From positions 62,001 through 126,000 of the IMG/VR virus record IMGVR_UViG_3300027759_000045: a DNA stretch of 64,000 nucleotides; one strand, given 5' to 3'. A program made the translations under genes and the position numbers. Positions 48,227 to 49,270 of this stretch are shown in pieces. Each line of letters opens with the position of its first letter. The stretch's first letter is position 1. The notes under the pieces are model-generated. The model was not told the DNA's origin and ran no database searches. It saw only the letters and a list, made by a program, of their open reading frames with translations.

Positions 48227-48254
48227 TTGACTTTTAATTTTTTTCTGTTATAAT
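48227..48254 (+). promoter_or_regulatory. sigma70 promoter, extended -10
   Basis: TTGACT-N16-TATAAT with TGn. Confidence 0.75.
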
Positions 48255-48264
48255 TACAACTGTA

Positions 48265-48354
48265 GGAAGCGTGTCCGAGTGGCCGATGGAACTGGTCTAC
48301 TAAACCAGCATACGAGTAATCGTATCGTGAGTTCGAATCTCACCGCTTCCGCCA
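48265..48354 (+). tRNA. tRNA-Ser(ACT), rare A34 anticodon
   Basis: CTGGT-CTACTAA-ACCAG; Ser-type long variable arm and G73. Confidence 0.85.
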
Positions 48355-48453: not shown

Positions 48454-48840
48454 ATGAACTCTAATCCTGAGCGCAAGAACAATTTAGAATACGACTTGCG
48501 GAATACCAAGTGGATCTGCGACAAGGCCAAGGCCAGCGAATTTTACGCACAAAATCTGTATGCTGCCATGTGCAATCAAGACTGGCAAAAAAATGAAGTT
48601 TGGCCGTTGCTCAAAAGCGAAACATACAGTTGCAGTTGGCGCTATGCCGGTGGCATTGTGGCCGACATGGTCGAAAAGGGTGACTATATCGATTGGTACT
48701 GCTCAGGTATTCGTGGAGAACAAGGCATCGATTACGAGCCTCCTCTAACTTTTGTGCCCGAAGGTACAGTCACAGAAGAAATACGCGAAGACTTTTTTAA
48801 ATTAGGATGGATTCCTATTGATCAAGTAGACGATGAATAA
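48454..48840 (+). CDS. hypothetical protein, 128 aa
   Basis: ORF with AGGA RBS. Confidence 0.8.
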   Translation: MNSNPERKNNLEYDLRNTKWICDKAKASEFYAQNLYAAMCNQDWQKNEVWPLLKSETYSCSWRYAGGIVADMVEKGDYIDWYCSGIRGEQGIDYEPPLTFVPEGTVTEEIREDFFKLGWIPIDQVDDE

Positions 48841-48849
48841 ATAAGTGTT

Positions 48850-49270
48850 ATTGCTGTATGAAGCAAAGAGAAAAGTGTTCTGGACGGGGGTGCGAATCCC
48901 CCCAGGTCCACCAAAAAGACTTTTACCCTAGACCGCAAGAGCCAACTACATGTTGCGGAAAAGGATGTGAAGGATGTGTCTGGATTAGCTATTTTGAAGC
49001 ACTAGCTAGATGGGAGAGTCTTTTTGGAGGGCCTGACCTAGATTCGACAGGGCAACAAGTAAATTAGTGGACAGCTCGGGAATGTGAAACCCGTAGGGTT
49101 GGGGAGACTCGGCCGAAGAAGCAAAAAACGTAAATGCAAACGTAAACAAAACCGTAACTGTTTCAGGCAAGAATATCAAGTTCTCTGCTCGTTCAGCCAA
49201 GGAAGCATTGGCAGTCTAAACACTGCCTAGGGTTTTTGGTAATTTATCCTCGTAACAGAATTAAATTACC
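48850..49270 (+). ncRNA. ssrA: circularly permuted two-piece tmRNA
   Basis: acceptor piece first (T arm GGGGG-TGCGAAT-CCCCC, CAGGTCC-A-CCA ending 48913); coding piece from GGGCCTGAC..ATTCGAC at 49029 with G3-U70; tag ANVNKTVTVSGKNIKFSARSAKEALAV at 49136-49219; 5' end approximate. Confidence 0.9.
48858..49067 (+). CDS. Oxidored-like (CC..GC..CVW..Y) small protein nested in the tmRNA gene
   Basis: PRPQEPTTCCGKGCEGCVWISYFEALARWE encoded in the tmRNA spacer. Confidence 0.5.
   Translation: MKQREKCSGRGCESPQVHQKDFYPRPQEPTTCCGKGCEGCVWISYFEALARWESLFGGPDLDSTGQQVN

What the first reader, a model, noticed from the sequence alone, without database searches (positions are those of the whole stretch)
48850..49067. 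Protein-coding frame threaded through a permuted tmRNA, with a metal-binding motif in the excised spacer
Seen: the spacer (48914-49028) is closed by a 13-bp stem (CCAAAAAGACTTT/AGAGTCTTTTTGG). Its loop encodes PRPQEPTTCCGKGCEGCVWISYFEALARWE, in frame with an ATG inside the acceptor piece and a stop inside the coding piece. Known: this pattern resembles the Oxidored-like small domain (P..P..CC.SGC..CV...Y). Inference: the tmRNA precursor may double as an mRNA, so that processing and translation compete. Alternatively a small gene was captured in the spacer.
Basis: partly seen in the sequence, partly recalled or inferred. Interest (0 to 1): 0.7.

Follow-up and report, generated by a model that had tools for sequence, protein, structure and literature searches.

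The report
Small protein gene nested inside phage tmRNA
A giant freshwater phage carries a two-piece tmRNA gene whose discarded middle segment encodes a conserved cysteine-rich mini-protein that can only be read from the unprocessed RNA, so one transcript appears to serve first as a message and then as tmRNA.

Summary
The window lies in a 346,856-bp phage genome with terminal repeats. Positions 48852-49219 are a permuted tmRNA (Rfam 104.7 bits; cut-off 47). Its 115-nt intervening segment (48914-49028) is closed by the 13-bp stem. A 69-codon ORF (48858-49067) starts in the acceptor piece and stops in the coding piece. The loop matches Pfam Oxidored-like (41.5 bits; cut-off 24).

Forty-nine related viral loci (33 distinct sequences) keep the frame intact. 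Only the loop evolves like a protein: pN/pS 0.22, and 27/22/101 substitution steps at codon positions 1/2/3. The flanking tmRNA parts show no codon periodicity. No start codon lies in the spacer before the domain, so the ATG in the acceptor piece is the only candidate start. Translation must therefore use the unprocessed precursor.

Homologues also occur free-standing, or directly upstream of a tmRNA and reading through it. Other phage tmRNAs of this clade carry different small genes in the same slot, so this is a captured gene. Competition between translation and processing is inferred, not shown. The protein's function is unknown.

The parts
48227..48254 (+). Sigma-70-like promoter (TTGACT, 16 nt, TATAAT, TG before the -10). 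It is the likely start of the unit tRNA-Ser, tRNA-Met, ORF128, tmRNA.
   Evidence: 11 of 12 hexamer matches. No promoter-like site was found directly upstream of the tmRNA in the window.
48454..48840 (+). Upstream ORF of 128 aa with no Pfam family. Its stop codon lies 17 nt before the ATG of the threaded ORF.
48852..49219 (+). Permuted (two-piece) tmRNA gene.
   Evidence: RF04321 at 104.7 bits, gathering score 47, model 1-213. ARAGORN tmRNA*. One search gives the same hit in the whole genome.
48852..48913 (+). Acceptor piece. It holds the 5' helix strand (48853-48856), the T-arm (48886-48902), the acceptor 3' strand (48903-48909), discriminator A and the encoded CCA (48910-48913).
   Evidence: alignment. 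T-arm and acceptor pairs are kept in 33/33 relatives, with covariation in the T-arm. Metatranscriptome contigs begin at 48847 and several end at 48913.
48858..49067 (+). ORF of 69 codons threaded through the acceptor piece, the spacer and the first 39 nt of the coding piece. ATG at 48858, TAG at 49065-49067.
   Evidence: Intact in 49 related loci.
48914..49028 (+). Intervening segment (spacer), expected to be removed when the two tmRNA pieces mature.
   Evidence: Boundaries follow from the CCA end and the 5' G of the acceptor stem. RNA depth in the spacer is 0-4, against 365-620 and 450-488 on the flanks in run X18.
48911..48923 (+). 5' arm of the closing stem. It overlaps the CCA end. In relatives this arm is Shine-Dalgarno-like (AAGGA).
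49015..49027 (+). 3' arm of the closing stem.
48927..49019 (+). Coding sequence of the Oxidored-like (PF09791) domain, with the motif P..P..CCG.GC..CVW..Y. Four Cys are invariant.
   Evidence: 41.5 to 41.7 bits. Invariant columns. pN/pS 0.22. Substitution steps 27/22/101 by codon position.
49029..49236 (+). Coding piece. It holds the acceptor 5' strand (49029-49035), the tag reading frame (49136-49219, resume codon GCA, stop TAA) and the 3' terminator hairpin.
49210..49236 (+). Intrinsic-terminator-like hairpin followed by a T run. It overlaps the tag stop codon.

Best explanation
A small phage gene for an Oxidored-like (PF09791) four-cysteine mini-protein has been captured in the intervening segment of a phage-encoded two-piece tmRNA gene. 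In the process it lost its own start and stop signals.

The protein is read from an AUG in the 5' part of the acceptor piece. Translation runs through the T-arm, the acceptor strand and the CCA end, crosses the whole spacer, and ends 13 codons into the coding piece. It can therefore be made only from the unprocessed precursor, most plausibly by ribosomes following the polymerase before the tRNA-like domain can form.

Once the acceptor stem and the closing stem fold, RNase P and 3' trimming remove the spacer. This yields mature tmRNA and separates the ORF from its start or its stop. Translation and maturation are thus mutually exclusive uses of one molecule.

Shown here: the tmRNA, the stem, the domain, protein-level selection confined to the spacer loop, the absence of any start codon in the spacer, and the captured-gene origin.
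Inferred: the start site, the timing, the competition, and metal binding by the protein.
For: 1. Identity of the parts.

2. The spacer loop is a translated gene.
- In 33 distinct sequences, pS = 0.555, pN = 0.122, ratio 0.22. The two other frames give 1.58 and 0.87 and contain 66 and 136 stop codons.
- Parsimony steps on a tree are 27/22/101 at codon positions 1/2/3 (chi-square p = 1e-17).
- The acceptor piece gives 14/22/23 (p = 0.29).
- One indel exists in the insert and it is in frame, two codons long.

3. No in-frame ATG, GTG or TTG lies between the CCA end and the first Cys in any relative (codon alignment). The acceptor-piece ATG and an open frame are present in 32 of 33 distinct sequences. 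The exception has ACG and an in-frame ATG 21 codons upstream.

4. The frame is kept open specifically in Oxidored-bearing tmRNAs. Among tmRNAs of the clade that have this ATG but other spacers, 15 of 32 have a stop at codon 3 or 4. Among Oxidored-bearing ones the count is 0 of 32 (Fisher p = 7e-6 by sequence; p = 0.06 when counted by distinct codon types).

5. Capture.
- Free-standing homologues with their own ATG and stop exist in phage contigs.
- Homologues sit directly upstream of tmRNAs.
- The same tmRNA backbones carry unrelated spacers.
- The phage's only Oxidored-like copy is this one.

6. The structure model agrees. The domain has pLDDT 78-89. The tails encoded by the tmRNA pieces are below 50, as expected for passenger sequence.

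7. Metatranscriptomes are consistent with processing. Depth is high on both mature pieces and near zero in the spacer. Two low-depth exact contigs cover acceptor piece plus spacer (48847-49026) and spacer plus coding piece (48928-49137).
Against: - There is no direct evidence of translation: no proteomics or ribosome profiling.
- The ATG has no Shine-Dalgarno sequence upstream.
- The motif TGTATGAAG is a conserved RNA feature of the whole tmRNA clade, so its presence alone is not evidence of a start codon.
- One lineage (L023, P0005) has ACG at that position.
- In the minimum-energy fold of the full precursor the AUG is paired, and that fold is not significantly more stable than shuffles (z = -1.36).
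- The RNA-library evidence comes from assembled contigs. It is confounded by related tmRNAs that share the mature parts, and DNA carry-over cannot be excluded.
- One relative known only as a protein (P0011) looks frameshifted.
- Some related jumbo phages keep the gene 28-65 kb away from their tmRNA, so nesting is not required for its function.
Confidence: 0.7

Rival explanations
1. The gene is translated from the excised spacer or from an internal unconventional start just after the CCA end, as an independent mini-mRNA. The threading through the tmRNA pieces would then be incidental.
For: - Other spacers of this tmRNA clade are self-contained cassettes, with AAGGA(G) right after CCA, an ATG 3-17 nt after that motif (9-23 nt after CCA), and a stop in the 3' arm.
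- Several Oxidored-bearing relatives keep the AAGGA motif after CCA.
Against: - No ATG, GTG or TTG occurs in frame between CCA and the domain in any of 33 distinct sequences.
- No near-cognate codon sits at a fixed place.
- The stop lies beyond the RNase P site, so the excised spacer would be a message with neither start nor stop.
- The frame from the acceptor ATG is kept open only in this class.
Confidence: 0.1
2. The nesting is a neutral hitch-hike. The small gene sits in a highly transcribed slot and is made from the precursor, but there is no regulatory competition and no functional link with tmRNA.
For: - Related jumbo phages have the gene 28-65 kb from their tmRNA.
- Many unrelated small genes occupy the same slot, including DUF2061, DUF6356 and a CxxCxxCC protein.
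- tRNA-mRNA co-transcription is common in bacteria (general knowledge).
Against: - The Oxidored-like gene is found at the tmRNA in two different arrangements, inside the spacer and directly upstream reading through the acceptor piece.
- These arrangements occur on different tmRNA backbones and in at least two protein clades. That is more than one chance insertion would give.
- This does not exclude neutrality. The rival differs from the main explanation only in the consequences, not in the anatomy.
Confidence: 0.15
3. The open frame and the motif are by-products of RNA-level constraints or a decaying relic, and no protein is made.
For: - The N- and C-terminal parts of the ORF are plain translations of conserved tmRNA sequence, and gene callers also produce such ORFs on tmRNAs with other spacers.
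- One relative (P0011) appears frameshifted.
Against: - The Pfam hit is well above the cut-off.
- Third-position excess and low pN/pS occur only in the loop and only in this frame, at near-saturated synonymous divergence.
- Free-standing homologues exist.
- The wider family has 545 clusters of small proteins.
Confidence: 0.03

Closest known systems
Two-piece (circularly permuted) tmRNA genes of aquatic phages, e.g. OM43 phage Melnitz and pelagimyophages (PMC9004378); Rfam RF04321 (PMC11915505)
   Same: - The gene order is acceptor piece, intervening segment, coding piece.
- It has a tRNA-like domain with a G:U pair and an encoded CCA.
- It carries a tag reading frame.
- It is phage-borne in aquatic samples and sits among tRNA genes.
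   Different: Those descriptions treat the intervening segment as non-coding. Melnitz instead has a glutamine riboswitch in the 3' domain. Here the segment encodes a conserved protein domain, and the ORF overlaps both mature pieces.
Other inserts reported in tmRNA genes: group I introns, some with homing-endonuclease genes, in the T-loop; a tRNA-Ala gene or a repeat element in the intervening sequence of permuted forms (PMC11915505)
   Same: A second genetic element is nested in a part of the tmRNA gene that is absent from the mature RNA.
   Different: - There is no intron, no splicing and no endonuclease domain.
- The cargo is an ordinary small protein.
- Its reading frame depends on sequence in the mature tmRNA pieces for both start and stop.
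Oxidored-like family, Pfam PF09791 (N-terminal domain of human CYB5RL; human OXLD1; many small bacterial and viral proteins)
   Same: - The HMM score is above the cut-off.
- The motif P..P..CC.GC..CVW..Y has four invariant Cys.
- The size matches the small stand-alone members.
- The CYB5RL N-terminus appears among the fold matches at 32% identity, but not significantly.
   Different: - It has no start or stop of its own and is embedded in an RNA gene.
- The family's biochemical function is unknown. The OXLD1 literature only places it in mitochondria.
Self-contained small-gene cassettes in the intervening segments of sister phage tmRNAs
   Same: - They occupy the same slot, closed by the same stem.
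- They are on the same strand.
- They are under the same purifying selection, pN/pS 0.17-0.24.
   Different: Those cargos have a Shine-Dalgarno motif in the 5' arm, their own ATG, and a stop in the 3' arm. They could therefore be translated from the excised spacer. The Oxidored-like cargo has none of the three.
Dual-function RNAs and tRNA-mRNA co-transcripts (e.g. SgrS/SgrT, RNAIII/hld, the E. coli tufB operon); from general knowledge
   Same: One transcript yields both a functional RNA and a protein.
   Different: In those cases the coding and RNA-function parts are separate, or the RNA stays intact. Here the ORF crosses two processing sites of the RNA product.

Membership tests
Permuted two-piece tmRNA (Rfam RF04321) | Covariance-model score above the curated gathering score, over the full model | tested here: met
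   104.7 bits against 47, model 1-213. One search gives the same result in the whole genome.
Permuted two-piece tmRNA (Rfam RF04321) | tRNA-like domain: T-arm, 7-bp acceptor stem with G3:U70, discriminator and encoded CCA, formed between the two pieces | tested here: met
   all pairs are kept in 33/33 relatives, the U:G pair is invariant, and the T-arm covaries.
Permuted two-piece tmRNA (Rfam RF04321) | Tag reading frame opening with an Ala resume codon and closed by a stop | tested here: met
   27-residue tag at 49136-49219. It is unusually long and ends in LAV rather than LAA.
Permuted two-piece tmRNA (Rfam RF04321) | Precursor cleaved into two pieces, with loss of the intervening segment | tested here: inconclusive
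   RNA-library depth is high on both pieces and 0-4 in the spacer, and some contigs end at 48913. The data are assembled contigs and related tmRNAs share the mature parts.
Permuted two-piece tmRNA (Rfam RF04321) | Acts with SmpB in trans-translation | not testable with these tools
   No SmpB gene is present in the phage genome. The host is unknown.
Oxidored-like, Pfam PF09791 | HMM score above the gathering score | tested here: met
   41.5 bits against 24, E = 1e-10; 41.7 bits.
Oxidored-like, Pfam PF09791 | Conserved Pro and Cys motif (P..P..CC.GC..CVW..Y) | tested here: met
   two Pro, CC, G, GC, E, C, Y and W are invariant in 17 sequences from three genomic arrangements.
Oxidored-like, Pfam PF09791 | Evolves as a translated protein | tested here: met
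Oxidored-like, Pfam PF09791 | Metal binding or redox activity of the cysteines | not testable with these tools
   The complex prediction with Zn was not folded by the tool. There was no significant structural match.
Self-contained gene cassette in a tmRNA intervening segment (as in sister phage tmRNAs) | Own Shine-Dalgarno motif and start codon within about 25 nt after the CCA end | tested here: not met
   The window has AAAAGAC after CCA, and no in-frame start codon occurs before the domain in any relative.
Self-contained gene cassette in a tmRNA intervening segment (as in sister phage tmRNAs) | Stop codon inside the 3' arm of the closing stem | tested here: not met
   The Oxidored frame reads S-L-F/Y-G/D/E-G-P through the arm and stops 3-18 codons (9-54 nt) into the coding piece.
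Intron-borne homing-endonuclease gene in tmRNA | Group I intron in the T-loop and an endonuclease domain | tested here: not met
   One search shows no intron family in the window. One search shows that the only domain is Oxidored-like. The insert lies between the pieces, not in the T-loop.

The most novel reading that the evidence does not exclude
Phage two-piece tmRNA genes act as modular expression slots. The intervening segment is a swappable cassette for small genes. The processing stem doubles as a Shine-Dalgarno/anti-Shine-Dalgarno pair, so cargo translation and tmRNA maturation are kinetically coupled.

In the Oxidored-like class the cargo has fused with the tmRNA itself. Cleavage of the precursor then turns the message into a non-stop mRNA, which is the very substrate of trans-translation. 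This could give the phage a built-in switch between making the protein and making tmRNA.
Probability: 0.3. Interest if true: 0.85.

Novelty: new variant of a known kind. Interest (0 to 1): 0.75.

Why it matters
tmRNA genes are annotated as pure RNA genes, and their intervening segments are treated as spacer. This case shows a conserved protein hidden there, in a reading frame that overlaps the mature tmRNA on both sides. It is present in dozens of uncultured freshwater phages, and sister tmRNAs hold other small genes in the same slot.

If confirmed, three consequences follow:
- It adds a class of overlooked small phage proteins.
- It provides a natural example of one transcript that is consumed either as message or as structural RNA.
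- It offers a simple system for studying how translation and tRNA-type processing interfere.

It also gives the uncharacterised Oxidored-like domain, which has human homologues OXLD1 and CYB5RL, a compact viral model.

Tried and rejected
**Searches that found nothing useful**
- DNA and protein searches of 50,697 GenBank phage records found no relative. No cultured phage is available.
- The scan of 185,579 species genomes gave one weak hit in a Solirubrobacterales MAG. The search patterns were narrow, so distant cellular cases are not excluded.
- Relatives of a virus record cannot be drawn by taxonomy.
- Foldseek against PDB and Swiss-Prot models gave nothing significant.
- The Atlas search only repeated the Pfam family.
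- The Zn complex job was not folded and says nothing.
- DNA of the apparently frameshifted relative P0011 could not be fetched.

**Leads that did not hold**
- A link to thioredoxin was considered, because one free-standing homologue overlaps the stop of a thioredoxin gene. It was seen in that lineage only.
- The minimum-energy fold of the whole precursor is not better than shuffles, so nothing was built on it.

**Readings rejected**
- ORF as an artefact of RNA conservation: selection is confined to the loop and to this frame.
- Intron or homing-endonuclease element: no such domains or RNA families are present.
- A gene on the opposite strand: stops occur in all reverse frames.

Full report
**Setting.** The window is bases 62001-126000 of a 346,856-bp virus record with direct terminal repeats, judged complete. 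It holds 26 tRNA genes between 40.8 and 54.3 kb and one tmRNA. Public runs that hold the stretch are freshwater and lake metagenomes. No GenBank phage resembles the locus at DNA or protein level.

**The observation.**
- Rfam's permuted tmRNA model matches 48852-49219 on the + strand at 104.7 bits (gathering score 47) over the whole model.
- ARAGORN reports a permuted tmRNA with a 27-residue tag.
- Reading the sequence: the acceptor piece ends in ACCA at 48910-48913. The coding piece starts with GGGCCUG at 49029-49035, which pairs with CAGGUCC at 48903-48909 and includes the G:U pair.
- The stem 48911-48923 / 49015-49027 has 13 pairs, one of them U-G. It dominates the predicted fold (-44.7 kcal/mol, z = -3.5, 0 of 200 shuffles as stable).
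- The ORF 48858..49067 (69 aa) starts in the acceptor piece and ends with TAG, 39 nt into the coding piece.
- It matches Pfam Oxidored-like at 41.5 bits (cut-off 24, E = 1e-10). The 30-residue loop peptide alone scores 41 bits.
- A six-frame search of the whole phage finds this copy and no other.

**Relatives.**
- A protein search returned metagenomic ORFs with the same loop peptide at 68-97% identity. It also returned many ORFs that share only the first 20 residues, which are simply the translation of the conserved acceptor piece joined to other spacers.
- A scan of viral contigs with the alignment gave 63 loci.
- ARAGORN and Rfam place the domain inside the intervening segment of a permuted tmRNA in 49 of them. 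Their tags vary, from ANDSQFALAA-like tags to 27-residue tags like the window's.
- All 49 keep one uninterrupted frame from the acceptor-piece ATG to a stop in the coding piece. They comprise 33 distinct ORF sequences.

**Is the loop really coding?**
- Pooled Nei-Gojobori counts over the 33 sequences give pS = 0.555 and pN = 0.122 (ratio 0.22) for loop codons 23-53.
- The two other frames give ratios of 1.58 and 0.87 and are full of stops.
- The acceptor-piece codons give 0.53 and the coding-piece codons 1.17.
- Parsimony steps on a tree are 27/22/101 at codon positions 1/2/3 in the loop (p = 1e-17). In the acceptor piece they are 14/22/23 (p = 0.29).
- The only indel in the insert removes exactly two codons.

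So the loop evolves as a protein, and the flanks evolve as RNA. The closing stem is under RNA constraint as well: eleven pairs are kept in all 33 sequences, with compensatory A:T/T:A and C:G/T:A exchanges.

**Where does translation start?** No ATG, GTG or TTG lies in frame between the CCA end and the first cysteine in any relative. The ATG in the acceptor piece is therefore the only candidate.

That ATG is part of a motif (TGTATGAAG) common to the whole tmRNA clade, so its presence alone proves nothing. However, among tmRNAs with this ATG and other spacers, 15 of 32 close the frame at codon 3 or 4. Among Oxidored-bearing ones, none of 32 does (Fisher p = 7e-6 by sequence; p = 0.06 if only distinct codon types are counted).

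One lineage (L023, P0005) has ACG instead and an in-frame ATG 21 codons further up.

There is no Shine-Dalgarno motif before the ATG.
- In relatives L007 and L024, a 12/12 and an 11/12 sigma-70 promoter end 14-15 nt before the ATG, so the leader would be only about 8-9 nt.
- The window lacks that promoter. It has a promoter-like site at 48227-48254, ahead of two tRNAs and a 128-aa ORF whose stop lies 17 nt before the ATG.
- About a third of the window's long ORFs have a Shine-Dalgarno-like motif, so its absence is not unusual here.

**Origin of the insert.** Homologues occur in three arrangements.
- Free-standing genes have their own ATG and stop, for example P0010 in a phage contig with PhoH, a 2OG-Fe(II) oxygenase and MazG-like genes, where it overlaps the stop of a thioredoxin gene.
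- In several loci the gene lies directly upstream of a permuted tmRNA and reads in frame through the whole acceptor piece, stopping just after the CCA end. These include L057, L062-L068 on two tmRNA backbones.
- In the third arrangement the gene is nested in the spacer, as in the window.

The domain tree has only 37 columns and is weakly resolved. It does not make the nested copies one clade: a clade with 96/94 support joins two nested groups with upstream-type copies. Two jumbo relatives have both a tmRNA and the gene, 28-65 kb apart. The gene is therefore an ordinary phage accessory gene that has been drawn to the tmRNA locus more than once. Nesting is not obligatory.

- Seven or eight carry the Oxidored-like insert. 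In most of the rest (all but about ten, mostly short spacers) the acceptor-ATG frame stops before the end of the spacer, usually within a few codons.
- Of 21 other spacers of 120 nt or more, 17 are filled to 80-97% by a + strand ORF. Shuffles reach that in 0-6 of 200 trials, and the opposite strand does so in one case.
- These ORFs start 9-23 nt after the CCA end, behind an AAGGA(G) motif that forms the 5' arm of the closing stem. In most of those examined the stop lies in or just before the 3' arm.
- Three have Pfam families: DUF2061, DUF6356 and CxxCxxCC.
- Three pairs give pN/pS of 0.17-0.24.
- Rfam spans the long spacers with full-length tmRNA matches in 9 of 10 loci tested.
- The tmRNA backbones nearest to the window's carry other spacers, so cassettes are exchanged on similar backbones.

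The Oxidored-like cargo is the special case that has neither its own start nor its own stop.

**Expression data.** Six lake metatranscriptomes hold parts of the stretch.
- In run X18 the depth is 365-620 on the acceptor piece and 450-488 on the start of the coding piece, but 0-4 in the spacer.
- Several contigs end at 48913, the CCA end.
- In X17 and X15, low-depth exact contigs cover 48847-49026 and 48928-49137. These are precursor-like molecules.

This fits excision of the spacer from a precursor that does exist. The data are assembled contigs, however. Related tmRNAs share the mature parts, and DNA carry-over cannot be excluded.

**The protein.**
- AlphaFold gives a modest model (mean pLDDT 66.8). 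It shows a confident small domain with a beta hairpin carrying the CC..GC..C knuckle followed by a helix (residues about 21-56, pLDDT 78-89). The tails that correspond to the tmRNA-encoded parts are disordered.
- No significant structural neighbour was found.
- A profile search finds 545 clusters of mostly 44-190-residue proteins.
- The function of the family is unknown. Metal binding is a reasonable guess from four invariant cysteines, but it is untested (one search gave no result).
- The phage has no SmpB gene.

**Mechanism proposed.**
- The precursor is first a message. Ribosomes load at the AUG near its 5' end and translate across the T-arm, the CCA end and the spacer, then terminate early in the coding piece.
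- When the RNA is free of ribosomes, the acceptor stem and closing stem form, RNase P and 3' trimming remove the spacer, and the two tmRNA pieces mature.
- Either cut disables the ORF. A cut at 49028/49029 leaves a message without a stop codon.
- These steps follow from the anatomy and from what is known of two-piece tmRNA maturation. They were not observed here.

**Literature.** Phage two-piece tmRNAs are known (PMC9004378). The current tmRNA database paper mentions a tRNA gene, a repeat element, and intron-borne endonuclease genes as inserts (PMC11915505). Searches of the held library found no report of a protein gene in the intervening segment.

**Verdict.** The locus belongs to a wider, apparently undescribed habit of aquatic phage tmRNA genes.

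Noticed in passing
L086:1935-2237, L145:2889-3245, L132:9750-10007, L140:3295-3501 (-), L096:3056-3271 (-), L080:1650-1835 (-), L188:772-924 (-), L075:2349-2474 (-): Intervening segments of sister phage tmRNAs hold other complete small genes (35-120 aa). A Shine-Dalgarno motif forms the 5' arm of the closing stem, and in most the stop lies in or just before the 3' arm. Pfam families are DUF2061, DUF6356 and CxxCxxCC. pN/pS is 0.17-0.24. Of 21 long spacers, 17 are filled by a + strand ORF.
   Followed up: yes
L065:3019-3189, L062:3001-3171, L068:3037-3207, L057:3004-3192, L064:966-1148: A second arrangement. The Oxidored-like gene lies directly upstream of a permuted tmRNA. Its frame runs through the whole acceptor piece and stops a few codons after the CCA end, so 3' maturation of the acceptor piece would remove its stop codon.
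   Followed up: partly
L060:3181-4384: Compared with the syntenic L065, a 1.3-kb insertion of two genes separates the Oxidored-like gene from the tmRNA. One of the genes has a weak GIY-YIG (SegE-like) endonuclease match. The Oxidored ORF there ends in what looks like a leftover of the tmRNA 5' region.
   Followed up: partly
protein P0011 (metagenome contig, DNA not retrievable): This is the one relative whose Oxidored frame appears shifted after CEGCV. Its neighbour is a TctC/Bug-family gene, which suggests a bacterial chromosome rather than a phage.
   Followed up: partly
window 49136-49219: The tag peptide is unusually long at 27 residues and ends in LAV rather than the usual LAA. Close relatives (L004, L065) share it. 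Other tmRNAs with the same acceptor arm have ordinary 10-residue ANDxxFALAA tags.
   Followed up: no
window 48265-48354; also L064:868-955: tRNA-Ser with anticodon ACT (A at the wobble position) stands just upstream of the tmRNA region in the window. In L064 it lies directly before the Oxidored-like gene.
   Followed up: no
L023:2995-3003 and protein P0005: One lineage has ACG in place of the acceptor-piece ATG. The frame stays open to an ATG 21 codons upstream, and the extension differs between the two sequences only by conservative changes.
   Followed up: partly
L007:2957-2985, L024:2958-2986: Near-perfect sigma-70 promoters (12/12 and 11/12) end 14-15 nt before the ATG of the threaded ORF. 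The tmRNA precursor would therefore be an almost leaderless message. The window lacks this promoter.
   Followed up: partly
acceptor pieces of L096, L188, L132, L111 and others: Many tmRNAs whose cargo has its own start carry ATG-AAG-TAG or ATG-AAG-TGA-TGA at the acceptor-piece ATG. This is a start followed almost at once by a stop, which might keep ribosomes from reading into the tmRNA.
   Followed up: no
window 49037-49043: In RNA runs X18 and X19, sequencing-adapter letters are joined directly to positions 49037 and 49043. This points to frequent fragment ends 8-14 nt inside the coding piece rather than at its predicted 5' end.
   Followed up: no
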